Part shown: one piece after another, positions 17,701-44,404 of the stretch
Layout of the letters: each line of letters opens with the position of its first letter
Numbering within the stretch: position 1 is the stretch's first letter
Assembly: GCA_977030845.1 (NCBI GenBank)
Contig: OZ365110.1
Coordinates: 27,776,001-27,840,000, forward strand
Length of the DNA: 64,000 nt
Source of the DNA: Fimbriosthenelais zetlandica
Lineage: Eukaryota
Direction: 5' to 3'
Notes under the pieces: model-generated
Seen by the model: the letters and a program-made list of their open reading frames with translations, nothing else
The model's database searches: none
Told to the model about the DNA's origin: nothing
Made by a program: the position numbers and the translations under genes

Positions 17701-20247
17701 CCTTCTCCTTCATTGTCATCCTGAGTCAGTAGAACTAGTTTCAGAGGAGGCTTTAGCTTTCTGTATCAGCAGCCACTCAGGGAAGGTGGTCATTGTCAAT
17801 TTAAAGGAGGGGGAAATTGTGCGAAGCTTTGAAAATTCCAAGTATGTAGATCACAGCAGCTACTGGATTAGTCCAGGTGGCCACTACATCCTTTTGGCCA
17901 CGAGATGTCATGGAGTGGATGTAATCAATGTTGCTTCGGGAAAGATAACCAAGTCCATTGGTGAGAAGATTGAGCTCAACATGCGACCATCAAATGGGAA
18001 GCCACCAACTACAATTCCCATCCCAACACAAATAGCAGTGGATGAAGAAGGCCACTGTCTTTTTGTGGGTTGTCTCAATGGTTCCATCAAGATCTATTGC
18101 ATAGCTACAGGGGAGCATGTGGACACCTTACATGGTCACAGCAAGGCAGTGAACAGTCTCTCTTTTGATCAGGAAGGTATGTTGTACTCTGCAGCTGATG
18201 ACCAGATGGGAAGAGTCTGGTTTGTAAAGGACATAATGAGAAAATATAACAAGCTGTACACTGAGGTAGGCGGAGATGTTTCTCAGTGGGATGGGTCTCG
18301 CCAGTTTGAGGAGATTTTTGACATCAACGTTAGCATCATGGAGAGGGAAATGGAGAAATTCCCCACTGAGCAGTTGAAGATCACATCAATGGCCATGACA
18401 GCTGATCAAAAGTTTATAGTGACATCATCCCCAAAAAGTCCTGTCAGACTGTGGTCTACAGAAGATGGTGAGTTATTTGTAAATGTATTTCATTTGAGAA
18501 ATTCAGAATGTCTACATATAAAGGAATTGCTTAATTCTAGATAGCGGGTATATCTAAATTCTAATATTCTACTTCATGTTGTTGCATACCATCAGGTCAG
18601 CTGATTCGTTCTTATAAAGATGGTTCCCGCCATGGGGCATACCACGTCTACTTAGCTTACAAAGACCAGTTTGTGGTGGCCCACTGTAACAACCCAGTAG
18701 CTACTAGAACTAAAATCCTGCAGGTAACTCTTTCACTTTTTGCATATTAATAATTTTCACAAGATTGATTATGATTTTTTCTCAATCACAGGCTGGTTTG
18801 CTAGACTTAGTTGCAGGACATATTGTGCTATAATCCTAGACCTGTAGCAGTCATATAAATAAGGTCAAAAATTAAAATGTTGGTGTTCCAGGTTTGGCGG
18901 AAGGATACTGGAAATCTCATGAAGCTGATGGATAGAGACATCTTGGTTTACACTAGTTGCGTGACTCCTGACGGTTCTAGGATATTTGTGGTTGCACCAT
19001 CAGAAAAGAAAGCCTCAGGTATCAATATCCGAAATTAGTATTATTTTGAAAAAAATAACACAATATCTTCTGATTGTTATAATTTTCATCGCTGTATTAA
19101 AACTACATGTAATTGATTACCTTCTTTTTTGCAGGAATTGTGCTGGGATTGTATGACTTATTTGACTTGAAACAAACAGCCACCCTCGCCTGCAACATCT
19201 ACGGTGCTATGGATAGCACCAATTTGTTCCTAGTTGGCTGCATCAACCGGACGACAAATAGTGTCCCAACAGCACTATCCATAATAGAATCTGAACCTAT
19301 AAGCAGTAAACCAGAAGAGGATGATAGTGAAGAAACTGAACCCAAAGCTGATGATCATGAAAGTGTCAATGAGGAGGTTGAGAAAATACAAACCTATGCC
19401 GTTTTGGACTACTGTCCAGATGATGGTGTCTCCTATTTTTTCAACTTCACTATTGAAGAGGATAAAATCAGTATGGACCGACATGTTCCATTACACATGG
19501 ACACACATTCGCCAGGGTGCACTGTACTGCTTGATGATGGTTTTGGTATCAGTGGAGCTGTTGATGGGTCGCTTGTGGTATGGGATATGGTGAAGCAGGA
19601 GATTCTGGCAACGTTGGTAGATCCAGCACTGCTGAAGGCAGTCAAAGCTGGCAACCTTAAGTATGCCAGCAGCACTGGGCAACCTGGCCATGACGGCATG
19701 GTCACCTGTCTTACGCTTTGTCCTAACAAGCAATTCCTGGTTTCAGGTGGCATTGACCTCAAAGTGAGAGTTTGGGATGTGGGCAAAAGACAGTTAATGT
19801 CCGTTCTTTCTGGCCATTCTGATACTGTGAGTACCACTGCATTTTCCACTACAAGTCCCAATTAATGATTATGTTGTAGTAAATCTGATTATAGGATCCT
19901 CATTTACATATCGGTGGCTAATTCATAGAAATTATTTTAAATATTGCCTTTAATTAGGCCTCCGTATATATATAAAACACACTTTACTATCCTTGCCAAA
20001 CTTAGTATGAGATTATTATTTGCAGATCCTGACGGTTGATGTTTCCCAAGATGGCAGAACGGTAATTTCTGGCTCAGCAGATGAGAACATACTTATCTGG
20101 AATGTCAGCAGTCAGAGCAAAAAGGCCACCTTCTTTGCTCATAAGATTGTCTCTAAACTAGCAGTTGCTAGTCGGATATCGCATATCTTTGCATTATGTG
20201 GCAAAAGTCCATCAAATATGATAGCATTAAAAATGGGTAATGTGTAG
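8753..20247 (+). CDS. NACHT-domain and WD40-repeat STAND NTPase (NWD1/NWD2-like) with a DUF4062-like N-terminal domain
   Basis: Coding exons 8753-8755, 9817-9902, 10374-10495, 14079-14281, 14433-14603, 14739-14856, 14952-18467, 18596-18723, 18892-19018, 19135-19826, 20026-20247; phases are consistent. Motifs: DNLPPQSPSTVRLYLCSNYEDMKAER...FQLVDLHWGV, Walker A GPAGSGKT, Walker B LYVILDGIDQL, and WD repeats (GHSKAVNSLSFD, GHDGMVTCLTLCPNKQFLVSGGIDLKVRVWD, GHSDTILTVDVSQDGRTVISGSADENILIWN). The N-terminal three exons are less certain than the rest. Confidence 0.9.
9599..9622 (+). repeat. Poly-T tract (24 nt), intronic
   Basis: Read directly from the sequence. Confidence 0.9.
12364..12435 (+). repeat. 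C/T-rich polypyrimidine low-complexity tract, intronic
   Basis: Runs of CCCC(C)T. The complementary strand is G-run rich. Confidence 0.85.
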
Positions 20248-20831: not shown

Positions 20832-21834
20832 TCAACGTAAGTGACCAGCCTTAAATTCTCTGACCATTTTGGCAAGAACAGTCATGGAATCATAGAGCCC
20901 TTCTCCCGTATTAGCACAAGTTGCGTGTATATGCCATTTGTGTTTGAGATCTTGCAATGACAGTTTTTCTATGAGCTGAGATGGATTTAAGGCTAGAGGA
21001 AGATCTTGCTTGTTCCCCAGTACAAGTAGAGGGACTCCCTGCATTTCCTCCTGTCCCAACACTGCATGAAGCTCATCTCGAGCTTCCTCCATTCGACTGA
21101 TATCATTGGAATCCACCACGTATACCAATGCTAAATGTAAGATCAATACAATGTCATATAAAGATACAATAGTAGGCCTAGTTGGACTTGGTTTGGTATG
21201 AAACTGTTGGTCTAGCTGATGGCTTGTTTCACGACTATCTAAATAATCTGAAAACTTTTGCATGGGTCTGGTATAGGTATAAATGGTGAAAAAGTGTATA
21301 TGACATACAACTATTATAGAAGTTCACTTTTACCATAGAACTGTAGTCTCCTAGAGTTCTATGCTTTTACCTACCGTCTGTATCCTTGAAGTAAAATTTC
21401 CATAACTGTCTGATTTTATCCTGGCCACCAATGTCCCATACTGTGAAAGAGATGCCTTTAACAGGTTCAACTGTCTCTACATTAAAGCCTATTGTTGGGA
21501 TGGCAATTAAGCGTTCATTCAGCTTGATCTTGTATAGGACAGTTGTTTTTCCTTAAAAAAAGATACTTTGTACTACAGATGTGCACTACAGATACAGTAT
21601 ATAGTTACATCTAGGCTAATCAGAACTAATAATGTATAATATGAAATTTTATTCATATAACAATTTGCAACTTCTTAGGTGGAATCTCTTTCTTGTATTG
21701 ATTATATTTTCAAAATGTAAATTTGTACATATACCTGCTGCATCCAAGCCAAGCATTAGGATTCGCGCACTATCTCCCTTAGACGAAACGAAAGACTTGT
21801 AAACCGTGCCCATCTTTGAAGCTAAGGAACCCAT
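20832..21834 (-). CDS. ADP-ribosylation factor family small GTPase (divergent ARF), 3 coding exons, about 191 aa
   Basis: Exons 21834-21735, 21551-21375, 21130-20832. Motifs: MG N-terminus, [49 protein letters not shown]. Confidence 0.95.
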
Positions 21835-31579: not shown

Positions 31580-31969
31580 CCCCCATCGGTGACGTGGAAA
31601 CACTGTTCTGGGGAAATACCGCGCTTTCTGATGACGTCATACAAAATACCGTGCACAACTTCCTGTGACATCATAGGAAGTTGTGCACAACGTCATAGGA
31701 AGTTGTGCACAACGTCATAAGAAGTTGTGCACACAATTTCCTGTGACGTCACACACAATCATGGATTCCACCACCGCGGCGATCGTTCAGAAAAAAAGTT
31801 CATTGGAAAAAAAGTATATATCTTCTTCAGGGTTTTGGGAGGCAAACTGTGGTGAAAACAAATGCCACTAGATCTATATAAAAGTATGACGGTGTAAAAA
31901 ATCAGAGCAATCCGTCCAGTGGTTTGGGAGGAGTTACGTATAATCACACTTTTCGAGTTAGAGTATTAG
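31580..31969 (-). mobile_element. Non-autonomous Helitron-like repeat, interrupted by the LTR element; its terminal 12 bp lie at 44078-44089
   Basis: Removing the LTR element and one TSD gives a minus-strand A|TCTATATACTAATACTCT... start followed by ACTGGACGGATTGCTCTGATTTTTT, resembling Lep1-type Helitron 5' ends. No 3' hairpin/CTAG end was found, so the left boundary is approximate. Confidence 0.4.
31651..31752. repeat. 22-bp tandem repeat (about 2.8 copies) with inverted copies
   Basis: Unit TCATAGGAAGTTGTGCACAACG at 31671, 31693 and 31715 (partial); inverted copy at 31651-31668 forms an 18-bp hairpin; CRE octamers at 31632-31639 and 31744-31751. Confidence 0.85.
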
Positions 31970-32819
31970 TGTAGTGACCCACGGGAAATAAAGACCGACA
32001 AATAATTAGTATTCGTACCGGACCTTGACATTTATTAAACCACAGATACTAACAAGACATTTGCAGGCTGTTTTGGCAGACGCACAAAAGAGAACCAGTG
32101 GTAGTCAAGTAACCACACTTCTTACAGAGTCAACGGATGCGGTCGGTTCCAATCCCGTTCCGGGAACGAGATATGGATCCGGCCGGCATCCGGCAAACTA
32201 CTTAAAAGGAAGCGATATACTCCATGCCGGTTGAGCCGAAGACCTTGATGTCTTCAGCCCGGCAAAGGAGTAATCCTGAATCTCTATTAGCTGGTTACAT
32301 CGAAATACCTGAAAGCAACCTCTGGTATAATATCAATGCAAACATAAGGTTAATGGTTCACTAACTCCTAGGAATTCGGAGTTCGGAACCCCTAGAAAAA
32401 CTACTAGGAACCCTTGGAACCCACAGGCACACTGGGAACCCTTATACAAAGTGACCAAGGTCCTACTGAAATGACTATCCCATACAGCATTATGGTGTAG
32501 GAATGAAAGTAGTTAAATAAAATAAGTTATTATACATCAAGTTGCATGATTTAACATAAGTGTAAATACAAATGTAGACAGCAAGCACACTTCTAGGATT
32601 AAGCTATTAACATGAGCATGACATTGTGAGAGTTTATAGCTTAAGAGAGAGTGAAATGTTTATAATGAAAATAATAACTACAAAAAGCATAGCAGCAAAG
32701 CGCGCGTACTAGCTAACGGGCAGGTGTTGAACTAAATAAGCACTCAGGTGAGACAAAGATGCTTAGTACTGTATACTGTCTATAGAGGTAGCAGCGGCAG
32801 AGGCACTGAATTCATTACA
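31970..32819 (-). repeat. 3' LTR (850 bp)
   Basis: No difference from 43228-44077 found in a base-by-base reading; minus-strand AATAAA at 32031-32036. Confidence 0.97.
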
Positions 32820-32822
32820 ATG

Positions 32823-32831
32823 CCCCCTTCT
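32823..32831 (-). other. Polypurine tract
   Basis: AGAAGGGGG on the minus strand, 3 nt before the 3' LTR. Confidence 0.8.
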
Positions 32832-33435
32832 AACTTCGGACGGAGAACACCACGTTCGCAGTCCCGCTGAAGTGACAAGAGTCTATAGTTCATGGCGAAG
32901 CCGCGCTCTGACAGTACAGGAATGGAGTGTCTTTGTTAACAAAAGATGCGAGGGCGAGCCCGAGAACTGGAATACACAATGTTCTTGTAGATGGTGATGG
33001 AGGAATCACTGTCTATATGACTAAAGGGAATACTACGTGGAGAGTCTGAGTCCGGCGAAACATTGTTCTCGTAGGTGGTGATGTATACTACAAAACCCGA
33101 CTTGGACACAGATAATGTGTATAGTATTCTCCTACAAGGTTCTATGATGACTAACACACAGTCCTGAAAAGGACTCCCCTGGGTTTCACAAGGGTACGAA
33201 TCCTACAAACTCCACGCTCGTGCACAGAGAGTGCCCGAACCCGGGGTGGAAGACGATCCCACGACGGCCGACGAGCTCCTAACCAAGCCATGCTCACAGA
33301 GAACAACGGTGAACAAGATGGCGGATGAAGACGATGAGGAGAGATGGTGGACCAGCCACGCTATCTCAGCTGTCACACATGGCACGGATGAGGTGAAAGA
33401 GTGCCGGGCCGGCAAGAGGATGGAAGGATGCCGGG

Positions 33436-35853
33436 TTAGACGTCGGTCTCACGGCCAGCCGGGTGGTCAGTGCCGGGTGGCGAGGACGGGGAGGAGGATC
33501 CGGCCCCTGAAGATGGCGAAGCTTCAGGAGCGCCCAACTGAATGTCCGTAGTCATCTGGGCGAGCCGGCTCAGGTCCCCGGGGGTCGCTGAGTCGGACTC
33601 GTCCCCACTCTGTAACAGAGCATCTTCATCAAAGTTCTCATCTCTAAGCGGCATCCCGGCAGTGACTTGTTGCAGCAGGGAGATGCCGGCGTAGGGGTGA
33701 GAATCGTCCACTACCACCTCTTGAGCGGCCGGCAGAAGAGGAGTAGGAAGGACCACTGGAGTTGGATCCGGTAGGATCAGAAAGTCCACTGGAGTAGAGT
33801 CGACAGGCGCTTTACTGACAGTGGCCGCAGGGATAGGCTTTACTCCGGGAGGAAGGGAGCCAGTCGCCTGCTTCTTCATAATCAACTCAGCCGCCCGGCC
33901 CATCAGAGGAGTAGGTCGGGAGGTTACTTCTGCTAACCTGAGCGGAGTGGAAGTGCCGCGAGGCGTTTCTGTCCGGACAGGTGGTCTTGAAGTACCGAGG
34001 GTAGCAGCATAAGAAGCCGCAGGCACCACAGGTACTGGAGGATCGGGAAGAACTACTGCCGGGGCCGGGGCCGGGGCAGCCGCACCCAACAACTCTGGAG
34101 AGGTGTCCATGAAGGCCTGCCACTCCGGAGGAACGTTGATGGCGGAGAGGTTCTTCTCCATCAGTTGTTCCTCTAGTTGCTGGATAGTAGTATCCCTTCG
34201 TTTCATGGCGGCTTGCAAGGACTGGTTTTTGACCTTCTCGCGGGAGAGCTCCACGTGAAGGACAGCGACCTGGGCTTGAAGCTGCATAACCCGTTGCTCC
34301 GCGGAGGAGGAGATGGTCTCTTCCACTCGGCGACGAGTCGTCTTCATGGCCTGCTCGGCTAACGTTTCCATCGAGGTTGCCAGTCGCCTAGCTTCCTCGA
34401 CGAACCCACCGAGCTGGACTTGCATGGCCGAGCAGATCCCGTCCACGGCCTGGGCTGCAGAGAGGGTCTGGCTGGGGCCAGCTGCCGGCGTCGCGGAAGG
34501 TACCGCGGCCGCCGGGGCTGATGGCTGCTTTGGCGGTGCCGGACGGGGCACAGCCTGCCGGGCCGGAGCAGGAGCAGAGGCGGCTGCCGGGGTGGCGAGC
34601 TTCTTCTGTTTGCTTGGGCCTGGTTTCTTCATCGGTGGACGCGTAGTTACCACGGCCATCACTGAGGGTGGGGCCTGGTAAACAGCTTCCAGTGGAGACC
34701 TGCGTTTCGGTGCTCCACCACCTGGAGATGACACGGGGTCGTAGCCGGCCTTCCTCTTCCGGGGGATGGAGTAGGAGGGTGGAGGGCCAAAGACCTCAGG
34801 TGCCATTCCGGCGATCTTCTTGTATTCAGCCAAGCCTAGGGCGTTGACTTTAGAAAAGGCCCGGTTCGGCTTCAGCACCGGGTTGGTGTTGTAGGCACGA
34901 GCTAGGCTATCCTTTCTACTCGACTTGTGGCGGCCTTCCTCACGGAGACGTCCATGCCGGCCGAGGTCGACTCGGCGGTCCATCTCCCAGCCACAGTTTT
35001 GAAAATAACAGACGTAGACATCTTGCCCGGGGGCGTGTACTTCACACAGATGTCTGTATAGCCTGTCTTCAGTAAAATAGCGCCGCACCTTCCCGTTCGC
35101 ACTCTGTCCTGGGGACCGGCAGATCATGAAGGGGCAGCGGTAGCCGGGACGCCACAGGGTATGTGCCAGTTCCAGCTTTTTCCATACCTGAGGGGTGTAC
35201 TTGGGCCACCAAGAAACGCCCTCTGGTTTGGTCTTAATATCCAGTAGTTCGGTGTACCGAGCTTTGTAGAGAGAGAGCCGCTGATCTAGGTACTCGCTCT
35301 CATCATCACTCTCCTTCTCCTCATCAAAGCCGGGACGTTCCGTAGGATGGTCCGGATTCATGGGGAGGCAGTCGGTGACATCTTTAGGTGTGTAGAAGCT
35401 CATGGGGAGGTCTTCGAACTTCCATACCCGGCGAGGGATGGGTCGTTTGTCCTCATGGCACCATCGCGGAGTGTTGACAGTCAACTTCTCCGGATGTTTC
35501 TGATTCAGCCGCAGTTCCTCAGCCGGCGGAGGGAGGTCCTCGCCGGGAGCAGTCACCGGGGCCGTAGAGCTCGGAAGAGGTGAAGAGGGAGCTTTATCCT
35601 TAGCCTTCTTCTTCTTCTTCTTCGCCTTCTTGCGGGTAGAAGCAGTCGCCTGTTCTGCCGCAAGGAATCCTTCGTCCAGTCCAGTAGCCGGGGACGGAGT
35701 CTCCTGCTGCTGGGGTGCTGCCGGGGCAGCTTCTTCGTGAGATACAGGATCCGGCTGGGGAGCCGTCTCCTGCACCGATGGAGCGGTAACTTCCATCGCC
35801 TCTTCCACAGAAGCGACGGGACCGTCCGGCACAGCGAGCTGTGCACTAGCCAT
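33436..35853 (-). CDS. Retrotransposon ORF3: 805-aa non-env protein with two C2H2-like zinc fingers, NLS-like tracts, a coiled coil and Pro/acidic disordered regions
   Basis: Open for 2418 nt, in the same sense as gag-pol. Finger 1: YRCPFMIC...YFTEDRLYRHLCEVH. Finger 2: YVCYFQNCGWEMDRRVDLGRH...H (fingers at about 35142-34927). Basic tracts RKKAKKKKKKAK, PRKRK, PKRR. Heptad region about 34400-34150. No signal peptide, TM helix or furin-site/fusion-peptide arrangement is visible. Confidence 0.88.
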   Translation of the reverse strand: MASAQLAVPDGPVASVEEAMEVTAPSVQETAPQPDPVSHEEAAPAAPQQQETPSPATGLDEGFLAAEQATASTRKKAKKKKKKAKDKAPSSPLPSSTAPVTAPGEDLPPPAEELRLNQKHPEKLTVNTPRWCHEDKRPIPRRVWKFEDLPMSFYTPKDVTDCLPMNPDHPTERPGFDEEKESDDESEYLDQRLSLYKARYTELLDIKTKPEGVSWWPKYTPQVWKKLELAHTLWRPGYRCPFMICRSPGQSANGKVRRYFTEDRLYRHLCEVHAPGQDVYVCYFQNCGWEMDRRVDLGRHGRLREEGRHKSSRKDSLARAYNTNPVLKPNRAFSKVNALGLAEYKKIAGMAPEVFGPPPSYSIPRKRKAGYDPVSSPGGGAPKRRSPLEAVYQAPPSVMAVVTTRPPMKKPGPSKQKKLATPAAASAPAPARQAVPRPAPPKQPSAPAAAVPSATPAAGPSQTLSAAQAVDGICSAMQVQLGGFVEEARRLATSMETLAEQAMKTTRRRVEETISSSAEQRVMQLQAQVAVLHVELSREKVKNQSLQAAMKRRDTTIQQLEEQLMEKNLSAINVPPEWQAFMDTSPELLGAAAPAPAPAVVLPDPPVPVVPAASYAATLGTSRPPVRTETPRGTSTPLRLAEVTSRPTPLMGRAAELIMKKQATGSLPPGVKPIPAATVSKAPVDSTPVDFLILPDPTPVVLPTPLLPAAQEVVVDDSHPYAGISLLQQVTAGMPLRDENFDEDALLQSGDESDSATPGDLSRLAQMTTDIQLGAPEASPSSGAGSSSPSSPPGTDHPAGRETDV

Positions 35854-35934
35854 AGGGCTATTCGTTCAAGACAACACACTACCGGGATGCCGGGGATCAG
35901 TCAGGCGTGACGAGTGTAACTTTGCGTAAGGGAC

Positions 35935-36108
35935 CTACAAAAACCAAGAAAAACACCAGAAATTACTAATAATTCGGTTACAATTTTTGGCTCCGTAGAT
36001 GCCTAAGACACTCATACACAGAATGATCACAAAATGTGTTGTTCAACATACAATAATATGAGTAAAACATGCAAAAATAGAGCGGTAGAAACACAGCGTG
36101 ATACTCAC
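35935..36108 (-). other. Spliceosomal intron (174 nt) in the 5' leader of ORF3
   Basis: Minus strand CT|GTGAGTAT ... TTTCTGGTGTTTTTCTTGGTTTTTGTAG|GTCC; AT-rich interior within GC-rich flanks; ORF3 ATG lies 81 nt after the acceptor. Confidence 0.7.
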
Positions 36109-36866
36109 AGGTTCAAGTAAAAAGCGGAAGTGACTCTGGGTAGAGGTGCCGGAAAGCGTGAGAGTGTTTGTCGTAAAAACTACCGACCCTCTTACTCGTC
36201 ACATCTTTCCCTATGGCCTGCAAAAACCTCAATGAGTCCTACTCCCTACGAGAACCTAGTGTCACGTGGCTCCTGTGATCCAGACCTTCTTCGAATGGAT
36301 CCGCCTACTGCATAAATTTTACAACATCCTCCAATGACCTAACCGGGTCACCGTGACCTACTTCCTACCCGCCTCTACCCTCTTTCATGAAACAAGTGGG
36401 CGTGTTATGATCACGGCCGTACCACGGCTTTATTGGTCAAAAGAATCTTCATACCCGTTCATAGGTAGGAATTTAATGTCTTATAAAAGTCAGGAGGGCT
36501 GCCACGAAGGGGCGGCCTCTTCTCATCCTGATTGACAGGACCACATGGATCTGTCACTTCATACTGTTTGGTCCGGCACGCAGGATGCATTCATTATCGC
36601 CCAGCCGAGCAGCCATTCCTTTGAATTTGTCAAAGTCTCGTCCAGCTGACTAGCCGTCACCGGGTTGGATTCGTGCAAACTCATGCCGGGACAGGTACTG
36701 GGACTGGTTGCCAGTAGGGAATACCTTGCCGGCAGCCCGTCCTCGGAGCCTGACTCGCAAAAAGAGGGTAAGTCAAATTGCAAAATATCTTAGGTTTTCT
36801 TCATGCTTCATAAGTACTTCTCGTTGTGTGATTTTATTCTCTATCTTCGTATAGTGGTAGTAAATA

Positions 36867-39800
36867 CTACCGGACATAGTCGGTATACCTAACTGGGGCC
36901 CTTATCTGTCTTTTACCTGCCGCGCGGGCTACCGGGACTGCCACAGGCTTCAAAGGTGATAAATCATCCTCTGGCCCTGTATCCGGCACTGCCGCGGCAG
37001 GTGTGGCCGGCACTTCGATTGCCGGGCCACCTACCTTCTTCCTTGGCCTCAGTTTCTTCACATAGGTAACCTTTTCTGCCCTTTTTCTACTTAGGTTCCG
37101 TTTAGGCTTAGGAGGATCTGGTATTCTCACCCTCATCGGCTGACCTTTCTTCTTCCGAGGACGTCGCCGGGCCGGAGCCGGGGCAACCATTCCATCGGGA
37201 GCGTCCTTGCCGGGGATCGTGCGGCCGCAAAGGTCCGTGGTTATATATTCCACCCCCTTATCTTGCTGCGCACGATACTCCGGAGCCGTATGTAAGTTTA
37301 CCGTTTGTATCGCTCCATCTTTGCCAAAAACGGGCTTCAAGTAATCTACATGCCACCTCAGTTTAGTTCCATTGGTGGATTCTAATTCATAGGTAGTCCC
37401 GCCCGTTTGCCGGGTCACCACATAAGGTCCGTCGTACTTGCAACTTATCTTACGGGCGGCCTGGGCCGGCATATACCTATGAACCAGTTGACCTATCTTG
37501 TAGGTCCTTGGCCTGGAACGTGCATCAAAGTGTCGCTTCTGGTGCACGGCCGCTACGCCTAATTGTTCTCTTATAAACTGATGCCCTTTTCTCAATTGTT
37601 CTTTCAGTTGCTGAACAAAGGACACCCGGCAAGGAAAATCTAACGACCCCGGCACTACTCCGTAAAGCAGATCGGGAGGCGTCCATATCTCCGAGCCAAA
37701 GAGGGCACAGTTGGGTGTAACATAGGTACTGGCATGCACCGTCCCACGATAGGCACTGGCAATACACGGTACCAAGAGGTCCCAATTCGTCTCATCGTAA
37801 CTGGTAACGCAAGAAAGCTGTTCGGTTAGCACCCTATTGAATCTCTCCACGAGTCCATTACTCGAGGGCCTATAAGGCAGCGTTAACAGTTTTTCCATGC
37901 CCATTAGTGAACAGAGTTCCTTCAACAACATGGACCGGAATTCCGGCGCACCGTCCGTCTGGAGGGAGACCGGCGGTCCATATCTAAGGATCCATTCATT
38001 GAATAGAGCGTGGGCGACAGTCTCAGCCTTGTGATCGGGAAGCGGCAAGGCTTCCACCCACTTGGAGAAAAAGTCAGTGATCACTAATACACAGGTGTTC
38101 CCACGAGGTGTCGTTTGGAACGGTCCTATGATATCTAAGGAAATTCGGGAAAACCGGGTTCCGTGGATCTCCTTTTTTAATGGAGTCAGGCCGCGGCCGG
38201 CCCGGCTTTTGCGCATAGCACATGCCGGACATGCTTTGACCCAACGTTCTATGTCCCGCTTCAAGCCGGGCCAATAGAAACGTGTCTTCACACTCCATAT
38301 TGTCTTAAAGCCTCCATAATGACCACCCATTTTGGTTCCATGAACACTTTGGAAAACTTCTTCACGCATTGCCGGCGGGACTACTATGCGCCATTTGGCA
38401 CGGCCCGTAGCTTTGCGTACCCAGCGAAGACGGAGAATCCCATCTTCACCTACTTCTAAATCATCCCAAAGAGCAGCCAGCGTCTGAAATTCCTCCGACT
38501 CTCCCCGAAGTCGTGTTCGCTCAGGTAATTCAGCGCCCGCTTGCTTCAATTTGACAATTATCTTCACGTCCGGATCCTCCTTCTGTGCTTCCAACATGCC
38601 GGAGTCATGCTTAAACACTGATATAGAAGAGATCACCGGTGGATCCACAGCTTGAGCACACTCACAACTACAACGACCACATTTATCGCGCCTAGGCAGC
38701 CTAGATAGAGCGTCCGCGTTCTGGTGCTTAGCACCCGGACGATGCAATATCTTGCCACTACTGATGCCATATTCTTGGATCGTGGTGAGCCATCGTGCTA
38801 AGATGTTTTCGGGGTCTTTGAAGTTGACTAACCATTTCAATGAAGCATGATCAGTACGAACGACAAAGTCCTCGCAACCCAATAAGAAATGCCGGAACTT
38901 CTTCAGGAAACGCACTACCGCTAGTAACTCACGCTTCGTGGTGCAATAATTCTGCTGTGCCTTATTCAGAGAATTACTAGCATAGGCAATGACTCGTTCC
39001 TTCCCATCTTGGATCTGTGATAGGACGCCAGAAATACCGAAATTACTAGCATCCGTATCCAAGACATAAGTCCCTTTATCTCTCGGATACCCTAACACAG
39101 GAGCCTGTATTAGAGCCTTCCTGATGGACTCAAATGCTTTTTCACATCCTATCGTCCAATCAAACCGCTTTGTGTAAGTACCACCTAAGCGAGTAGCTTT
39201 AGTGATTACATCCCGCATGGGTTTAGCAAGTTCAGTGAAATTCGGGATAAATTCCCTATAATAGGAACTGAATCCAATGAACTGCCTGAGTTCCTTGGGA
39301 GTCTCCGGCCGGGGCCAGTTCTTCACGGCCCGAACTTTTGCCGGATCGGGTTGAACACCTTTACCCGAAACTATCCTCCCTAAGTACTCTACTTTACGTC
39401 TGAAGAGTTTGCACTTTTTGGGCTTTAACTTAAGTCCATAGTTTTGCAACCGCACAAACACTTCTCTGAGATTAGCTAACATTTCTTCAAACGTTTTGCC
39501 AAAAACAATAATGTCATCGATGTAGACTAAGCATTTCTTCCATCTTAATCCACTCAACATTGTCTCCATAGCTCTTTCGAACGTTGCCGGGGCATTACAC
39601 AACCCAAAGGACATGACTTTGAATTGAAATAAGCCGAGGCTTGAGATGAAGGCAGTCTTATCTTTACTGTCCTCATCCATAGCTATCTGCCAATAGCCGG
39701 AGTCCAAATCCAATGAGCAGAACCATTCGTTACCACCCAGAGCATCCAAAGCTTCGTCTATTCGGGGAAGCGGATAGCTATCCGTCCTAGTTGCCTGGTT

Positions 39801-41234
39801 AAGCTTCCGATAGTCTACACAGAAACGCATAGAACCATCTTTCTTCTTGACCATGACAATAGGAGAAGCCCACGAGCTTTCACTCGGTTCGACCACTCCT
39901 TTACTCATCATTCTACGGATCTCTTCCTCGGCTACTTCCCTGCGAGACTTAGGAAGCCGCCTGTAAGGCTGCCGGACGGGATGAGGATCCGTAAGTTCAA
40001 TACGATGTTTCACCTGGGTAGTCTGGCTAAAGACGTCGCCGGGCAAAGCGAAACACGTGCGGAACTCTTCTAGCAGATCTGTTGCCAGCTGCCGGTGCCG
40101 CGGATTAGTGATATGTGACTCGTCAGTGGCCTTTTCCAAGGGGCACTCTTCACTATCAGGTATCACAAAATCCGGACACATTACTTCATCGTCGGTTATC
40201 TCTACCGGATGCAAATCACCCAGCGGAGTACCCGCCGTTAACTTCATAGGCACTGGGGTCGGATTGGTAATCGGCACTCTAGTTTCTGAGTCTCGTACAA
40301 CATACGTGTGCAAACTCCCCAGATTATGCTTCGCCAATCCGATCCTGTCGGGTTCAAATAACAATTCACCCATAACCGGCTCCGACACAGTGATACGGCA
40401 CAGATGTAACTGGAATGCTTTCAGAGTAATGTCCTCTGAGAGCCGTGCTTTTCCAGCCGTCCGGCGCGCGCGACACATCACGTGTATGGATCCGTTCTCC
40501 AAGGTGAATCGTCCCGACCAGTCCAGGCTACATTGGTAGACATGATAAAAATCTGCCCCAAGCACTCCGTCATCGTCGCCGTCTATGCCGGACACGATTA
40601 AGCAAGGGATTTCAAACATCCGTCCACCAATGCAAAAGGGAAAAATTCCCACTCCTTCAGTCTGTAATGGATTCCCGTCAGCCACCTTAACCTCGGTACG
40701 ATTTGGAATCAGAGGGGGCGGATCACGCAGCGAATCATAGAACCGCTTGGTTATCAAGGACGTCGTCGCCCCAGTATCCATTAACAGTTCTCCGCACTGA
40801 TTGTTCACCATTACAGGAACATACCAACGATCCTTAACCAGAACGCTTTGTCCCGGCAAGGTTAAAGTGTGGCAACTTAAGTCAGCAGGCCTGATCTTCA
40901 CTATTTTCATCTGATTGGGATTGCCATTGGTTGGCTTAGCCACAAACAAATGAGAGCGACTCTCTGGGCCGGGTCTACTACAGGCCGCGCCGGGGTCATG
41001 ACGCCCGGCAACAGCTCCCGGCTCAGGATCAGGAACCTGAACGATTTCCTTCTCTACAAGGGAAACTGCTTTTCCCTGCTTCTTATCGTCTTCTGACATC
41101 GCCAAACTTTGTTTGCTCGATACAGTATTCTGAAGCGACTTCGACTGTTTCAGCTGATCCTTCCTTTGATCAACGTCATCAGCCGGCTTCAGCCCCGTCA
41201 GTGCACTTCTTACTGAGGAGCCGGAGGGTTTTCC
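36867..41234 (-). CDS. pol: pol polyprotein (aspartic protease, RT, RNase H, integrase with GPY/F), read by -1 frameshift from gag
   Basis: PR LMDTGATTS; RT CLVYIDDIIVFG; RH LDTDASNFG...ELLAVV...TDHASL...NADALSR; IN H-x6-H...CPAC, ISLDIIG / QTDGAPEF / GLVERFNR; KYDGPYVV. The pol frame is open upstream of the listed 41105 start as far as the slippery site. Confidence 0.97.
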   Translation of the reverse strand, partial: GKPSGSSVRSALTGLKPADDVDQRKDQLKQSKSLQNTVSSKQSLAMSEDDKKQGKAVSLVEKEIVQVPDPEPGAVAGRHDPGAACSRPGPESRSHLFVAKPTNGNPNQMKIVKIRPADLSCHTLTLPGQSVLVKDRWYVPVMVNNQCGELLMDTGATTSLITKRFYDSLRDPPPLIPNRTEVKVADGNPLQTEGVGIFPFCIGGRMFEIPCLIVSGIDGDDDGVLGADFYHVYQCSLDWSGRFTLENGSIHVMCRARRTAGKARLSEDITLKAFQLHLCRITVSEPVMGELLFEPDRIGLAKHNLGSLHTYVVRDSETRVPITNPTPVPMKLTAGTPLGDLHPVEITDDEVMCPDFVIPDSEECPLEKATDESHITNPRHRQLATDLLEEFRTCFALPGDVFSQTTQVKHRIELTDPHPVRQPYRRLPKSRREVAEEEIRRMMSKGVVEPSESSWASPIVMVKKKDGSMRFCVDYRKLNQATRTDSYPLPRIDEALDALGGNEWFCSLDLDSGYWQIAMDEDSKDKTAFISSLGLFQFKVMSFGLCNAPATFERAMETMLSGLRWKKCLVYIDDIIVFGKTFEEMLANLREVFVRLQNYGLKLKPKKCKLFRRKVEYLGRIVSGKGVQPDPAKVRAVKNWPRPETPKELRQFIGFSSYYREFIPNFTELAKPMRDVITKATRLGGTYTKRFDWTIGCEKAFESIRKALIQAPVLGYPRDKGTYVLDTDASNFGISGVLSQIQDGKERVIAYASNSLNKAQQNYCTTKRELLAVVRFLKKFRHFLLGCEDFVVRTDHASLKWLVNFKDPENILARWLTTIQEYGISSGKILHRPGAKHQNADALSRLPRRDKCGRCSCECAQAVDPPVISSISVFKHDSGMLEAQKEDPDVKIIVKLKQAGAELPERTRLRGESEEFQTLAALWDDLEVGEDGILRLRWVRKATGRAKWRIVVPPAMREEVFQSVHGTKMGGHYGGFKTIWSVKTRFYWPGLKRDIERWVKACPACAMRKSRAGRGLTPLKKEIHGTRFSRISLDIIGPFQTTPRGNTCVLVITDFFSKWVEALPLPDHKAETVAHALFNEWILRYGPPVSLQTDGAPEFRSMLLKELCSLMGMEKLLTLPYRPSSNGLVERFNRVLTEQLSCVTSYDETNWDLLVPCIASAYRGTVHASTYVTPNCALFGSEIWTPPDLLYGVVPGSLDFPCRVSFVQQLKEQLRKGHQFIREQLGVAAVHQKRHFDARSRPRTYKIGQLVHRYMPAQAARKISCKYDGPYVVTRQTGGTTYELESTNGTKLRWHVDYLKPVFGKDGAIQTVNLHTAPEYRAQQDKGVEYITTDLCGRTIPGKDAPDGMVAPAPARRRPRKKKGQPMRVRIPDPPKPKRNLSRKRAEKVTYVKKLRPRKKVGGPAIEVPATPAAAVPDTGPEDDLSPLKPVAVPVARAAGKRQIRAPVRYTDYVR
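41192..41234 (-). other. Programmed -1 ribosomal frameshift signal
   Basis: Heptamer G_GAA_AAC at 41234-41228, 6-nt spacer, then hairpin GCUCCUCAGU-AAGAAGUGC-ACUGACGGGGC. The -1 frame is closed by TGA four codons upstream and is then open into pol. Confidence 0.75.
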
Positions 41235-43093
41235 GGCGCCGGTTCAGCTTTCTCCACTTGACGAGATGCCTCCAATACGCTCAACGCGATCTGACGTATC
41301 GTTTCGCGTTTAGTCGGGCATACATTAGCATAGTGCTCCAGGGACCCGCATTCATAACAGGCTCCCCGGCGTCTTCTGCCTTCAGTATTGCCCCCTCCAG
41401 ACGCGGCCTGCGCGGGCGGGTTCGTTGCCGGGGGCTTTGAGGGCCCGGCACTCTTCTTAGAACCTCCCTGCCGTGCTGGAGTTGCTTCATTATTCGGTCT
41501 CCTACTAGCCTTAAAAGCCATGAACTCCGCCCAAAGCTGTTCATCGGATTCATCTTTAAAGGCCGGCGGGGCCGGTTTCTCTTCATGATCTGGGCCCTGA
41601 TGGACGACCTGCATTGCCGCGGCAAGAGGATCCGCAATCACCGACCCGTCAGGCGTATGCATAGACGAGGAGTAATGCAGAGCCATTGCCGCAGCATCCA
41701 TCAAATTCCTAGGGCGGAGCAGCCGGAGCCAACTACCAACCCTAGGATCTCTAAGGCCCATCGTGTAGTCATAAATGACTTCTTCATTCTGCGCCTGAGT
41801 CAGGGGAGGAGTGAAAATTTTCGCCGCCCTCCTACCCAATTCAAGAGCATATTGTTTGGCGGTTTGACGGTGTGTCTGCTTACACGCCCGATACTCAATC
41901 CGCCGCTTCATGGTATCCTTTTCACTAAAAAGATTGCTCAATTCCGTGAGGATATCTTCTACATGAAGGGACTGGTCCACGCAATCTGACACGCTTGCCA
42001 CATTCCGTAGGCCGTGGATTAAATGCCCTTTAAATTCTTCATCCGTCAAGCGCGAGGCTCGACGCACATTCCGAACTATCAACAAATAATCCTCCCAAGT
42101 CTGCTTATTGTTATCCCAAACTGGAAAGCTTTGACTTCTTAACTCCAGCCCTCTTGGTCGCTGCGTCGTACCTCCCTGATCTTGCTCACCAGGAGTACTA
42201 GCGGCCGGCCTTCGATCGGGATCGTATGCATAAATCCCTGAAATCCAGCTATTTTCCAGTATTCTTCTTGGGGCTTCCGATCGTGACGTATCAACAACCG
42301 GCTGCCTCTCTTCATTCCCGCCAGTGGCGCCGGAGGCGATCCGTGCCTCACTACACCGCCAGGCTGGCCTGGGGGCTTCGTGGGGCATAGTTCGCCGGTA
42401 CCGAACCTCTGGTGAGGACTCTGCCGGGACTGGATCCAAAGTCTGGAATCTCAAAGTCCGTTGGCGTCCGTCCTGCGTACGGGTTTCTTCTTCATTCTTA
42501 CCCGGCGTGCCGGGATTTATAGTCGACGATGGACCAGCCTTATAAACGGCTTCCCTCGGCCCGAGCGGGGCCTGGTCCATCACCGCACTCCAAGATCGGT
42601 GTGCAGCTCCTCCCGACACTGCTGCCGGCTTTGCCGGGCCGCTTAGAGACGCTGGGGGAGGCCCCCGAGCCATCTCATCAGCCGCCGCCTTCATTGCCGT
42701 AGCAGGCCATGCCGGAGGGATGGGTGGAGCGGGATACATCCAGGACGGGCCCGGCACCATCTGGGGATTCAGAAGGTGTGCATTCCCAGTCGTAATCATC
42801 CGCGACACGATCTGGTCGATCTGCTCAGGGGAGAGCAGATCCCCGCCCGGGGTGCTATGGTGACGAGGAATGGGTGAGGGAGTGTCTTTGCCCCGGCCGC
42901 GTGATCCTTCCACGCGCGGCGTCGCAAAAGACGATCCCGTCACCCCTTCAAAATCTCCGCCTGTCACCTGCGCCCCCGGCGCTTCGTTATTGGGGAGTGG
43001 AATCAGCGGCATCGAGGAGACCGGACTTTCGTCCTCTGCCCCCTGCGGCACCCTGGCCCATCCCAAATTCACCAAGAGATTGGTTTCATCCAT
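41210..43093 (-). CDS. gag: gag (627 aa) with capsid-like region and one CCHC zinc knuckle
   Basis: FPVWDNNKQTWEDYL...KQTHRQTAKQYALEL...YTMGLRD...PRNLMDA capsid-like pattern; CYECGSLEHYANVC (CX2CX4HX4C). Confidence 0.95.
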   Translation of the reverse strand: MDETNLLVNLGWARVPQGAEDESPVSSMPLIPLPNNEAPGAQVTGGDFEGVTGSSFATPRVEGSRGRGKDTPSPIPRHHSTPGGDLLSPEQIDQIVSRMITTGNAHLLNPQMVPGPSWMYPAPPIPPAWPATAMKAAADEMARGPPPASLSGPAKPAAVSGGAAHRSWSAVMDQAPLGPREAVYKAGPSSTINPGTPGKNEEETRTQDGRQRTLRFQTLDPVPAESSPEVRYRRTMPHEAPRPAWRCSEARIASGATGGNEERQPVVDTSRSEAPRRILENSWISGIYAYDPDRRPAASTPGEQDQGGTTQRPRGLELRSQSFPVWDNNKQTWEDYLLIVRNVRRASRLTDEEFKGHLIHGLRNVASVSDCVDQSLHVEDILTELSNLFSEKDTMKRRIEYRACKQTHRQTAKQYALELGRRAAKIFTPPLTQAQNEEVIYDYTMGLRDPRVGSWLRLLRPRNLMDAAAMALHYSSSMHTPDGSVIADPLAAAMQVVHQGPDHEEKPAPPAFKDESDEQLWAEFMAFKASRRPNNEATPARQGGSKKSAGPSKPPATNPPAQAASGGGNTEGRRRRGACYECGSLEHYANVCPTKRETIRQIALSVLEASRQVEKAEPAPENPPAPQ

Positions 43094-43205
43094 GATAATG
43101 GAATCACGGAATCCACCTACTCTGGCTACTCTGCATATAGGTTCGCGATTGCAACGCCGCGTTCACCTTAATGGGATCCCTTTTTAGGGGGACCGCTTTT
43201 CCAGT

Positions 43206-43225
43206 GAATCCTGGTCACGGCACCA
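43206..43225 (-). other. Primer binding site complementary to the tRNA-His 3' end
   Basis: TGGTGCCGTGACCAGGATTC, 2 nt after the 5' LTR; complementary to ...GAAUCCUGGUCACGGCA-CCA, the invertebrate tRNA-His(GUG) 3' end as I recall it. Confidence 0.85.
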
Positions 43226-43227
43226 AT

Positions 43228-44077
43228 TGTAGTGACCCACGGGAAATAAAGACCGACAAATAATTAGTATTCGTACCGGACCTTGACATTTATTAAACCA
43301 CAGATACTAACAAGACATTTGCAGGCTGTTTTGGCAGACGCACAAAAGAGAACCAGTGGTAGTCAAGTAACCACACTTCTTACAGAGTCAACGGATGCGG
43401 TCGGTTCCAATCCCGTTCCGGGAACGAGATATGGATCCGGCCGGCATCCGGCAAACTACTTAAAAGGAAGCGATATACTCCATGCCGGTTGAGCCGAAGA
43501 CCTTGATGTCTTCAGCCCGGCAAAGGAGTAATCCTGAATCTCTATTAGCTGGTTACATCGAAATACCTGAAAGCAACCTCTGGTATAATATCAATGCAAA
43601 CATAAGGTTAATGGTTCACTAACTCCTAGGAATTCGGAGTTCGGAACCCCTAGAAAAACTACTAGGAACCCTTGGAACCCACAGGCACACTGGGAACCCT
43701 TATACAAAGTGACCAAGGTCCTACTGAAATGACTATCCCATACAGCATTATGGTGTAGGAATGAAAGTAGTTAAATAAAATAAGTTATTATACATCAAGT
43801 TGCATGATTTAACATAAGTGTAAATACAAATGTAGACAGCAAGCACACTTCTAGGATTAAGCTATTAACATGAGCATGACATTGTGAGAGTTTATAGCTT
43901 AAGAGAGAGTGAAATGTTTATAATGAAAATAATAACTACAAAAAGCATAGCAGCAAAGCGCGCGTACTAGCTAACGGGCAGGTGTTGAACTAAATAAGCA
44001 CTCAGGTGAGACAAAGATGCTTAGTACTGTATACTGTCTATAGAGGTAGCAGCGGCAGAGGCACTGAATTCATTACA
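43228..44077 (-). repeat. 5' LTR (850 bp)
   Basis: Copy of 31970-32819, followed by the PBS on the minus strand. Confidence 0.97.
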
Positions 44078-44404
44078 TTAGTATATAGATAGAGTATCCA
44101 TCCCTATTCCAAGAACAGCTGGGTGGAGCCTGTGTAACCCTAGAAGGGGCCGATCATATAGGCTAGAGTATTAGTAGTCTATATAGATATAGATCTATAT
44201 AGGATCTTACTTGATAGCAGTCCTGCCTCTTCTGCGCCACGAAGCGTCACGGACCCAAAATTATACATGCCTGAGTCGGTTGGAGCCCTTGGGACACACG
44301 TCAACCGCACAATTCGTCTCGTGCCACATCTCGTTTAAAACGGGATCTCGTTCAGAGCGAGATCTGGATCACCGATACCCAGCCCAGGTTGGTGAAGGAC
44401 GAAG

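What the first reader, a model, noticed from the sequence alone, without database searches (positions are those of the whole stretch)
35854..36300. ORF3 has its own intron and a promoter-like leader inside the retroelement
Seen: a canonical 174-nt GT-AG intron (36108-35935) in the sense orientation, 81 nt before the ORF3 ATG, with an in-frame TGA in the leader so the intron is in the UTR. Immediately upstream of the donor is CACTTCCGCTTTTT (ETS/TCT-initiator-like, about 36130-36118), and an E-box GTCACGTG is near 36261. A sense intron can persist only if genomic RNA escapes splicing, implying regulated subgenomic expression. Two routes are possible: an internal promoter (as for foamy-virus Tas), or splicing from a leader donor such as AAG|GTGAAC at 43167/43166.
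Basis: partly seen in the sequence, partly recalled or inferred. Interest (0 to 1): 0.75.

Follow-up and report, generated by a model that had tools for sequence, protein, structure and literature searches.

The report
Retroelement accessory gene with possible intron
A young, intact gypsy-type retroelement carries a third gene for a zinc-finger-like nuclear protein. That gene seems to have its own promoter and perhaps a small intron just before its start, an unusual but not unprecedented way for such an element to express an extra gene.

Summary
Every letter and coordinate in the finding checks out: GTGAGT donor at 36108, T-rich tract plus TAG|G acceptor at 35935, 174 nt, 81 nt before the ATG at 35853, in-frame TGA in the leader, E-box, ETS-like motif and leader donor.

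The segment is a sharp compositional trough (34% GC, 43% T, against 51-60% in the flanks). Its ad hoc splice score beats all 246 coding control windows, but about 3% of host windows score as high.

The element is an 11.3-kb Ty3/gypsy-type LTR element with 850/850 identical LTRs and no breaks in its three ORFs.

ORF3 is not an envelope gene. It has no membrane segment and carries two C2H2-like fingers, a lysine run and a coiled coil. Its core domain recurs in the third gene of seven related elements, always 600-1500 nt after pol.

Those spacers are enriched for CACGTG (9 sites against 1.7 expected), and two carry TATA boxes, which supports an internal promoter. Intron-like segments ending just before the ATG occur in 5 of 9 elements.

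There are no transcript data, and no relative is close enough to test the splice dinucleotides. The intron is plausible but unproven.

An invariant 13-mer at the end of pol is unexplained.

Verdict: a new variant of a known kind.

The parts
44078..44081 (.). Target-site duplication TTAG, upstream copy in element orientation
   Evidence: Same 4 bases at 31966-31969
43228..44077 (-). 5' LTR, 850 bp, TG...CA. Has a TATA-like CTATAAAC near 43896 and AATAAA near 43293.
   Evidence: 850/850 identical to the 3' LTR
43208..43225 (-). Primer-binding-site-like stretch starting TGG, 2 nt after the LTR
   Evidence: Read. The tRNA was not assigned, and there is no tRNA gene in the window.
43161..43170 (-). 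Leader donor candidate AAG|GTGAAC (exon end 43167), 7/9 match to MAG|GTRAGT
   Evidence: Two other 7/9 sites lie at 43567|43566 and 42968|42967.
41210..43093 (-). ORF1, gag-like, 627 aa, one CCHC knuckle, no breaks
   Evidence: (zf-CCHC 17.5 bits, below the cut-off)
36867..41243 (-). ORF2, pol (protease, RT, RNase H, integrase), no breaks. The frame is -1 relative to gag and overlaps the gag end by 34 nt. The first ATG is at 41099.
36817..36829 (-). Invariant 13-mer ACACAACGAGAAG, 38 nt after the pol stop, preceded by AATAAA
   Evidence: Always -21 to +114 nt from the pol stop. No conserved RNA structure.
35854..36866 (-). pol-ORF3 spacer, 1013 nt, non-coding, 46% GC. Proposed internal promoter plus 5' UTR.
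36331..36335 (-). ATTGG (inverted CCAAT box). A second CCAAT lies at 36436-36432.
   Evidence: Not enriched in the family.
36263..36268 (.). E-box CACGTG (CACGTGAC on the sense strand)
   Evidence: Family-level enrichment.
36119..36132 (-). CACTTCCGCTTTTT. It matches an initiator (TCACTTC) and an ETS core. Candidate start region of a short exon 1 ending at 36109.
   Evidence: Only L008 shares TCACTTYC. From 36203 down to 36109 there is no upstream ATG.
35935..36108 (-). Candidate 5'-UTR intron, 174 nt: GTGAGT ... 14/18 pyrimidines ... TAG|G. 34% GC, 43% T, contains 3 ATGs.
35854..35934 (-). Exon-2 leader, 81 nt, no ATG, in-frame TGA 5 codons before the start
33436..35853 (-). ORF3, 805 aa, no breaks, 60% GC. 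P/A-rich, lysine run (residues ~74-86), coiled-coil-like 470-580, no signal peptide or membrane segment.
34834..35316 (-). Conserved core of ORF3 (residues ~180-340): two C2H2-like fingers (C240, C245, H268, H273; C282, C287, H300, H309)
32820..32837 (-). Polypurine tract region (..GAAGTTAGAAGGGGGCAT) abutting the 3' LTR
31970..32819 (-). 3' LTR, 850 bp
31966..31969 (.). Target-site duplication TTAG, downstream copy

Best explanation
ORF3 is a separately expressed accessory gene of a young, intact Ty3/gypsy-type LTR retroelement. It encodes a nuclear-type protein with a lysine run, two C2H2-like zinc fingers and a coiled coil. It is not an envelope protein.

Proposed mechanism:
1. The 1-kb pol-ORF3 spacer acts as an internal RNA polymerase II promoter. 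It is TATA-less in this copy, with an inverted CCAAT box at 36335 and an E-box at 36268.
2. Transcription starts somewhere between about 36260 and 36110, giving a short non-coding exon 1.
3. The T-rich 174-nt GT-AG segment 36108-35935 is removed as a 5'-UTR intron. This takes out three upstream ATGs and leaves an ATG-free leader.
4. ORF3 is translated from the ATG at 35853.
5. The LTR-driven full-length RNA that is reverse-transcribed must mostly keep this intron.

Shown:
- the anatomy of the element;
- the conservation of ORF3 and of the spacer architecture in the clade;
- the motif enrichment;
- the compositional trough.

Inferred:
- promoter activity;
- the transcription start;
- splicing;
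- the protein's role, most likely a nucleic-acid-binding regulator.
For: Element anatomy.

ORF3 is not env: no window of 19 residues reaches hydropathy 1.6.

ORF3 relatives:
- The core domain is the only part with relatives among 1.84 billion representative proteins: 6 hits, best E 2e-13.
- A profile of it finds the third gene of L003, L004, L005, L007, L008, L009 and L010.
- Wherever the context is visible, that gene lies 600-1500 nt after pol.

Internal promoter:
- CACGTG occurs 9 times, in 6 of 9 spacers, against 1.66 expected. None of 1000 dinucleotide shuffles reaches this.
- Density is 1.12 per kb in spacers against 0.13 per kb in coding stretches.
- L004 and L005 show ATTGG + CACGTG + TATAAA 120-230 nt before the ATG.

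Intron:
- The letters are as described.
- The GC trough is bounded by the GT and the AG.
- The score is above all 246 coding control windows and above the antisense strand.
- L003, L007, L009 and L010 also have top-scoring sense candidates that end 1-41 nt before their ATG.
- L007, L009 and L010 share an aligned GTA(A/G)GT 11-12 nt before a conserved block.
- One host acceptor in the window is T-rich in the same way.

Precedent: an internal promoter for the third gene in Oikopleura Tor3b/4b elements (PMC4402516).
Against: - No RNA evidence of any kind.
- The exon side of the donor is poor (CCT|), and there is no YTRAY branch motif in the intron.
- About 3% of host-DNA windows score as high, and other candidates in the same spacer score higher.
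- L004, L005, L006 and L008 have no convincing intron. The candidates in L003 and L007 are only 41-43 nt long.
- The intron itself has no alignable counterpart in any relative.
- The splice score was designed after seeing the candidate.
- The ETS/initiator-like motif is not conserved.
- A sense intron should tend to be lost on retrotransposition.
Confidence: 0.45

Rival explanations
1. Classical retrovirus/errantivirus route. ORF3 mRNA starts in the 5' LTR and is made by splicing from a donor in the leader or early gag (43167|43166, or 42968|42967) to the strong acceptor at 35935. In this reading, the local GTGAGT at 36108 is incidental or a minor alternative donor, and the spacer motifs are enhancers or chance.
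For: - Three 7/9 donor-like sites lie in the LTR, leader and gag start. The leader stretch 43227-43167 has no ATG.
- The acceptor is the strongest single signal: 14/18 pyrimidines then TAG|G.
- Strong acceptors directly before the ATG recur in L007, L009 and L010.
- ORF3s of LTR retrotransposons are typically expressed from spliced messages (PMC5408684).
- Tor3a env is spliced from a donor near the start of gag (PMC4402516).
Against: - It does not explain the E-box enrichment in the spacers, nor the TATA boxes of L004 and L005, which lack any acceptor-like tract.
- The leader donor is only a 7/9 match (GTGAAC).
- About 11 ATGs lie in the presumed R/U5 part of the LTR.
- Leader donors could not be compared across relatives, because LTR ends were not defined.
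Confidence: 0.25
2. There is an internal promoter but no splicing. ORF3 mRNA is an unspliced subgenomic transcript, as for env of Tor3b/4b. The T-rich 174 nt are simply part of the promoter or 5' UTR.
For: - Tor3b/4b env cDNAs start after pol and lack evidence of splicing (PMC4402516).
- Four of nine relatives show no convincing intron.
- There is no branch-point consensus.
- Comparable scores arise in 3% of host windows.
Against: - If the start lies upstream of 36108, three ATGs inside the segment would precede the ORF3 start.
- The trough is bounded by a perfect GTGAGT and by a pyrimidine tract plus TAG.
- Sense candidates outscore antisense ones in 5 of 5 elements that have one, narrowly in L010 (12.76 against 12.71).
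Confidence: 0.15
3. There is no separate expression unit. The signals are chance, and ORF3 is translated, if at all, from the full-length RNA by re-initiation or internal entry.
For: - Each motif alone is within chance.
- The leader RNA folds only marginally better than shuffles (z -1.95).
Against: - Fifteen ATGs lie in the spacer upstream of the donor.
- A 600-1500-nt spacer with enriched E-boxes is kept across elements whose pol proteins are about 40-59% identical to the window's.
- No known RNA family matches.
Confidence: 0.07
4. A reading about origin, compatible with the best explanation. The ORF3 cassette (promoter, 5'-UTR intron and coding region) descends from a cellular gene taken up at the DNA level by an ancestor of the clade.
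For: - ORF3 is 60% GC against 50% for pol. The intron has host-like composition: 34% GC against 38% in the host flanks.
- An intron cannot be acquired from a spliced mRNA.
Against: - All relatives of the ORF3 domain whose context is visible lie next to pol in retroelements.
- No cellular-looking homologue turned up among 1.84 billion representatives, in Pfam or in the PDB.
Confidence: 0.08

Closest known systems
Tor3b/Tor4b LTR elements of Oikopleura dioica (internal promoter Penv; PMC4402516)
   Same: A Ty3/gypsy-like element whose third gene is transcribed from a promoter inside pol or in the intergenic space after pol, independently of the LTR.
   Different: - The Tor third gene is a membrane glycoprotein (env). 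Here it is a soluble zinc-finger-like protein.
- Tor Penv transcripts showed no splicing. Here a 5'-UTR intron is proposed.
- No sequence relation was tested or found.
Foamy-virus internal promoter driving the transactivator Tas (my own knowledge; PMC4402516 states only that complex retroviruses transcribe some accessory genes from internal promoters)
   Same: An accessory, nuclear, non-structural gene downstream of pol with its own promoter inside the element.
   Different: - No similarity of ORF3 to any named retroviral protein came back from Pfam, the PDB or the fold search.
- Transactivation is untested.
- The element has no env.
Ogre LTR retrotransposons of legumes (sense intron, partially spliced; PMC6317226, PMC12786077)
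   Same: A sense-orientation spliceosomal intron kept inside an LTR retrotransposon, because only part of the transcripts are spliced.
   Different: The Ogre intron lies between two coding ORFs, and its removal joins the polyprotein frame. Here the candidate lies in the untranslated leader of an accessory gene.
Spliced sub-genomic third-gene mRNAs of retroviruses, errantiviruses and Tor3a (PMC4402516; PMC5408684)
   Same: A strong acceptor a short way upstream of the third gene's ATG, and a possible donor in the leader.
   Different: Those use gag-pol as the intron and have no local donor. Here a complete small GT-AG unit lies within the spacer.
Bdelloid rotifer LTR retrotransposons with captured extra ORFs (PMC5408684)
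   Same: LTR elements with non-env third genes of diverse origin.
   Different: That paper's text does not mention zinc. The ORF3 family here has no annotated relative.

Membership tests
Ty3/gypsy-type (Metaviridae) LTR retroelement | Two long terminal repeats ending TG...CA, flanked by a short target-site duplication | tested here: met
   850-bp LTRs, 850/850 identical, TG..CA, TTAG on both sides
Ty3/gypsy-type (Metaviridae) LTR retroelement | pol domain order: protease, reverse transcriptase, RNase H, integrase | tested here: met
   Pfam hits in that order along ORF2
Ty3/gypsy-type (Metaviridae) LTR retroelement | Primer-binding site after the 5' LTR and polypurine tract before the 3' LTR | tested here: inconclusive
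   A TGG-starting stretch 2 nt after the LTR and a purine run abutting the 3' LTR were read. No tRNA was matched.
Ty3/gypsy-type (Metaviridae) LTR retroelement | gag with a CCHC zinc knuckle | tested here: inconclusive
   zf-CCHC scores 17.5 bits, below the 20.8 cut-off. The CX2CX4HX4C pattern is visible at residues 578-593.
Env-bearing retrovirus-like elements (errantiviruses, Tor, retroviruses) | The third gene encodes a membrane glycoprotein (signal peptide, membrane anchor) | tested here: not met
   Maximum 19-residue hydropathy is 1.18. There is no hydrophobic N-terminus and only 2 sequons. No Pfam family matches.
Spliceosomal GT-AG intron | GT and AG dinucleotides, donor consensus, pyrimidine tract | tested here: met
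   GTGAGT, 14/18 pyrimidines, TAG|G
Spliceosomal GT-AG intron | Branch-point motif 15-45 nt before the acceptor | tested here: not met
   No YTRAY anywhere in the 174 nt. Animal branch sites are loose, so this is a weak negative.
Spliceosomal GT-AG intron | Splice sites kept in related copies | tested here: inconclusive
   No alignable counterpart exists. Positional analogues occur in 4 of 8 relatives. A shared donor occurs in the L007/L009/L010 sub-group.
Spliceosomal GT-AG intron | Spliced transcripts exist | not testable with these tools
No expression data were reachable.
Internal RNA polymerase II promoter of a retroelement (Tor Penv / foamy-virus type) | Promoter elements upstream of the accessory gene, kept in relatives | tested here: met
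   CACGTG: 9 sites against 1.66 expected, 0 of 1000 shuffles reach this. TATA boxes in L004 and L005.
Internal RNA polymerase II promoter of a retroelement (Tor Penv / foamy-virus type) | Capped transcripts that start inside the element | not testable with these tools
   No RNA data
Classical C2H2 zinc finger (Pfam zf-C2H2) | Profile match, and C-x2-4-C-x12-H-x3-5-H spacing | tested here: not met
   - No Pfam hit.
- Finger 1 is C-x4-C-x22-H-x4-H and finger 2 is C-x4-C-x12-H-x8-H.
- PDB sequence hits reach only E >= 0.05.
- Fold hits are all tandem C2H2 proteins but with E >= 0.28, on a model with pLDDT 59.
Foamy-virus Tas-like transactivator | Sequence or fold relation to Tas; binding to the LTR and the internal promoter | tested here: not met
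   No retroviral protein was returned by the Pfam, PDB or fold searches. Binding is not testable.

The most novel reading that the evidence does not exclude
This is a 'complex' retrotransposon clade of marine eukaryotes. A conserved, element-encoded zinc-finger/coiled-coil protein, made from its own internal promoter and intron-bearing leader, acts as a sequence-specific regulator of the element. One possibility is that it binds the invariant 13-mer ACACAACGAGAAG at the end of pol and so controls the balance between genomic RNA and sub-genomic or processed RNA. This would be functionally analogous to the regulatory genes of complex retroviruses but evolutionarily unrelated to them.
Probability: 0.12. 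Interest if true: 0.8.

Novelty: new variant of a known kind. Interest (0 to 1): 0.55.

Why it matters
Third genes of LTR retroelements are nearly always thought of as envelope genes expressed by splicing from the LTR transcript.

Here a whole clade carries a non-envelope, nuclear-type zinc-finger gene behind a promoter-like spacer. The clade is seen only in unannotated marine metagenome and read-archive contigs and in this window. At least this copy adds an intron-like leader.

If expression data confirm this, three things follow:
- It would be a second, independent case, after Oikopleura Tor, of an internal promoter in a gypsy-type element.
- It would be a rare case of a sense intron tolerated inside a replicating retroelement.
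- It would make the question of how genomic RNA avoids splicing directly testable from transcript data.

The ORF3 domain family and the invariant 13-mer are both undescribed as far as these searches reach.

Tried and rejected
**ORF3 identity**
- Word searches with full-length ORF3 and with residues 105-345 found nothing. There is no exact record of ORF3 or gag.
- ORF3 has no Pfam hit. PDB sequence hits are not significant. The AlphaFold model has low confidence (pLDDT 59), and its fold matches are not significant.
- ORF3 of L003 against the window's ORF3 by BLASTP shows no similarity. Only the profile search detects the shared domain.

**Search for more relatives**
- The ORF3-domain alignment found none in JGI metagenome contigs or in IMG/VR.
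- One 36-residue match in a bacterial MAG (L011) was taken as chance.
- Cluster look-up gave only unnamed singletons.

**The spacer**
- It has no similarity elsewhere in the window, so it is not a nested repeat. It aligns to relatives only at the 13-mer.
- No Rfam family matches in the element.
- The leader/intron RNA fold is marginal, z -1.95.
- No conserved structure surrounds the 13-mer.
- A conserved intron enclosing the 13-mer was rejected: relatives score at background.

**Promoter motifs**
- CCAAT/ATTGG is not enriched.
- The ETS/initiator-like motif is not conserved.

**Not completed or not attempted**
- LTR and leader comparison in relatives was abandoned, because LTR ends are not defined on the contigs.
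- The bacterial promoter/terminator scan was not used, as it is the wrong type of promoter.
- The exons were looked at only apart.

Full report
**1. The observation**

- The donor is cct|GTGAGT, with the G at 36108.
- A T-rich tract ends in TAG|G, with the last intron base at 35935. The length is 174 nt.
- The exon-2 leader is 81 nt (35934-35854) and leads to the ATG at 35853. It has an in-frame TGA five codons before the ATG and no upstream ATG.
- CACTTCCGCTTTTT lies at 36132-36119.
- CACGTGAC lies at 36268-36261.
- AAG|GTGAAC lies at 43167|43166.

The segment is also a sharp compositional trough. It is 34% GC and 43% T. The 200 nt upstream are 51% GC, and the 81-nt leader plus the first 120 nt of ORF3 are 59% GC.

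**2. How far beyond chance**

The single motifs are not beyond chance. The window holds 6 CACGTG against 6.9 expected.

I devised a score after seeing the candidate, so it must be read with care. It adds the match to MAG|GTRAGT, the pyrimidine content before YAG, and the GC contrast. Results:
- The candidate scores 13.64.
- No 400-nt coding window among 246 from nine elements reaches this (99th percentile 12.6).
- The antisense strand of the same stretch gives 10.8.
- 16 of 512 host-DNA windows (3%) do reach it.
- An antisense candidate in the 5' part of the spacer scores 15.0.
- A second sense candidate across the pol stop (36916-36750) scores 13.8.
- The intron holds no YTRAY branch motif, and the exon side of the donor is weak.

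The intron is therefore a good candidate but not a statistical certainty.

**3. The element**

It lies on the minus strand.
- Two 850-bp LTRs (43228-44077 and 31970-32819) are identical at 850 of 850 positions. They end TG...CA and are flanked by TTAG on both sides.
- A TGG-starting primer-binding-like stretch follows the 5' LTR after 2 nt. A purine run abuts the 3' LTR.
- ORF1 (43093-41210, 627 aa) is gag-like with one CCHC pattern.
- ORF2 (to 36867) has protease, reverse transcriptase, RNase H and integrase in the Ty3/gypsy order. Its frame is -1 relative to gag and overlaps the gag end by 34 nt.
- ORF3 (35853-33436) has 805 codons.
- None of the three genes has a stop or a frameshift. The count of breaks is zero.
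- There is no N in the window.
- Host genes nearby are a NACHT-WD40 gene and an Arf-family exon. I take the host for a eukaryote, probably a marine invertebrate. That is inference only.

**4. What ORF3 is**

It is not an envelope protein. No 19-residue window reaches hydropathy 1.6, and the N-terminus is not hydrophobic.

The protein is rich in proline and alanine. It has a lysine run (residues ~74-86), a coiled-coil-like stretch (470-580) and eight cysteines. Four of these, with four histidines, form two C2H2-like units: C240, C245, H268, H273 and C282, C287, H300, H309.

Database searches:
- Pfam gives nothing.
- PDB sequence hits are weak (KLF4 and a ZNF peptide, E >= 0.05).
- The word searches were blank. 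I therefore used the one exhaustive search. Six proteins among 1.84 billion representatives match, all on residues ~180-340, with a best E of 2e-13.
- A seven-row alignment gave a low-confidence model (pLDDT 59) with two beta-beta-alpha units. Its fold matches are all tandem C2H2 DNA-binding proteins, but none is significant.

**5. The clade**

The pol search returned relatives only from unnamed marine metagenome, Tara and read-archive contigs. The best are 59% and 52% identical, and the rest are about 40-43% identical.

Context could be read on ten contigs, plus one gene list without DNA.
- A profile of the ORF3 core finds the domain in the third gene of L003, L004, L005, L007, L008, L009 and L010.
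- Wherever pol is on the contig, this gene starts 600-1500 nt after the pol stop.
- ORF3 is thus an old, conserved gene of the clade and not a recent capture. I found no cellular homologue.
- In some relatives genes are in pieces. ORF3 of L004 and of L005 are each called as three genes, so at least two breaks each. pol of L009 is called as two, so at least one break. I did not determine the kind of break.

**6. Promoter-like spacer**

- Across the nine spacers, CACGTG occurs 9 times, in 6 elements, against 1.66 expected. None of 1000 dinucleotide-preserving shuffles reaches this.
- The density is 1.12 per kb, against 0.13 per kb in the coding stretches of the same elements.
- L004 and L005 show an inverted CCAAT box, CACGTG and a TATAAA box 120-230 nt before the ATG.
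- The window's copy has ATTGG at 36335 and CACGTG at 36268 but no TATA box in the right place.
- CCAAT is not enriched overall, and the ETS/initiator-like motif is shared by only one relative.
- With the 174 nt taken out, the distance from the E-box to the ATG (241 nt) would come close to that in L003, L004 and L005 (220, 192 and 185 nt). This is suggestive only.
- An internal promoter for the third gene has been shown in Oikopleura Tor3b/4b elements (PMC4402516).

**7. Introns in relatives**

The window's intron aligns to nothing. The two closer relatives end about 190 nt after pol.

By position:
- L003, L007, L009 and L010 have top-scoring sense candidates that end 1-41 nt before their ATG.
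- L004, L005, L006 and L008 have none that is convincing.
- L007, L009 and L010 share an aligned GTA(A/G)GT 11-12 nt before a conserved block.
- Two of the candidates are only 41-43 nt long, which many animals could not splice.

The TATA-bearing, intron-free L004 and L005 would fit lineages that lost the intron through reverse transcription of spliced RNA. That is conjecture.

**8. Mechanism**

My best reading (0.45) is an internal promoter, a short non-coding exon, removal of the 174-nt leader intron, and retention of that intron in the genomic RNA. Removing the intron takes out three upstream ATGs.

The rivals are:
- the classical route from a leader or gag donor to the same acceptor (0.25);
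- an unspliced internal transcript, as in Tor (0.15);
- no separate expression (0.07).

Sense introns kept by partial splicing are known from Ogre (PMC6317226). ORF3s of LTR elements are usually expressed from spliced messages (PMC5408684).

**10. Slips**

I declare the following, and nothing was deleted.
- **Joined stretches.** In the scripts, I joined separate stretches of the element in memory, only to count bases or motifs: the two flanks of a candidate intron, and pol + N + ORF3. None of this was printed, saved or used as a sequence. I redid the counts stretch by stretch with the same results. This report cites the clean runs wherever one exists.
- **Printed bounds.** The script printed the outer bounds of open-frame pieces of relatives that match the ORF3 domain. 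For L004 and L005 these bracket breaks. I repeat none of them here.
- **Strings from memory.**
- **Consensus patterns.** The splice, TATA, CCAAT and E-box patterns used in the scripts are generic textbook consensus patterns.

Noticed in passing
window 36817-36829 (-); L001 5688, L002 4579, L003 7854, L004 11086, L005 8110, L006 8909, L007 4825, L008 3806, L009 4980: An invariant 13-mer, ACACAACGAGAAG, usually after an A-rich run, lies -21 to +114 nt from the pol stop in all ten elements. L001 has one purine change and L006 has two mismatches. The pol proteins are only about 40-59% identical to the window's, and the rest of the spacers do not align. There is one copy per element. It is not in the LTR, is unlike the 3' polypurine tract, and has no conserved RNA structure around it. 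Its function is unknown.
   Followed up: partly
window 36750-36916 (-): A second sense GT-AG candidate (CAG|GTAAAA ... TCAG|G, 167 nt, 38% GC against 64% in the flanks, score 13.8) spans the pol stop and the 13-mer. The closest relative, L001, has a donor-like site at the same distance (87 nt) before its 13-mer. The other relatives have nothing above background.
   Followed up: partly
window 36838 and 36434 (-): The only two AATAAA hexamers on the sense strand of the 10.4-kb internal region both lie in the pol-ORF3 spacer. One lies directly before the 13-mer. This might mark an early polyadenylation site for a gag-pol RNA. I did not test it.
   Followed up: no
window 31970-44077: The LTRs are identical at 850 of 850 positions, and gag, pol and ORF3 have no breaks. 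This is a very recent and apparently intact insertion.
   Followed up: yes
window 41210-41243 (-): The pol frame is -1 relative to gag and overlaps its last 34 nt. The first ATG in the pol frame is at 41099. In several relatives pol is called with its own start codon just after, or overlapping, the gag stop. How pol is expressed, by frameshift or by its own start, is open.
   Followed up: partly
window 13925-19865 (+) and 20832-21263 (-): Host genes: a NACHT/NWD1-like STAND ATPase with WD40 repeats in one long open frame plus a further WD40 piece, and the last exon of an Arf-family GTPase with a T-rich acceptor (..tcttacatttag|).
   Followed up: partly
L003 12689-14641 (-): A second ORF3-domain-bearing open frame runs on the opposite strand to the end of the contig. 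A second element of the clade therefore lies tail to tail with the first.
   Followed up: no
L007, L009, L010 spacers: These three elements share a conserved non-coding block (CCGGTC..TTTTCTA....GCGTGCGAAT) directly after an aligned GTA(A/G)GT. The block lies at very different distances (272-696 nt) from their ORF3 start.
   Followed up: partly
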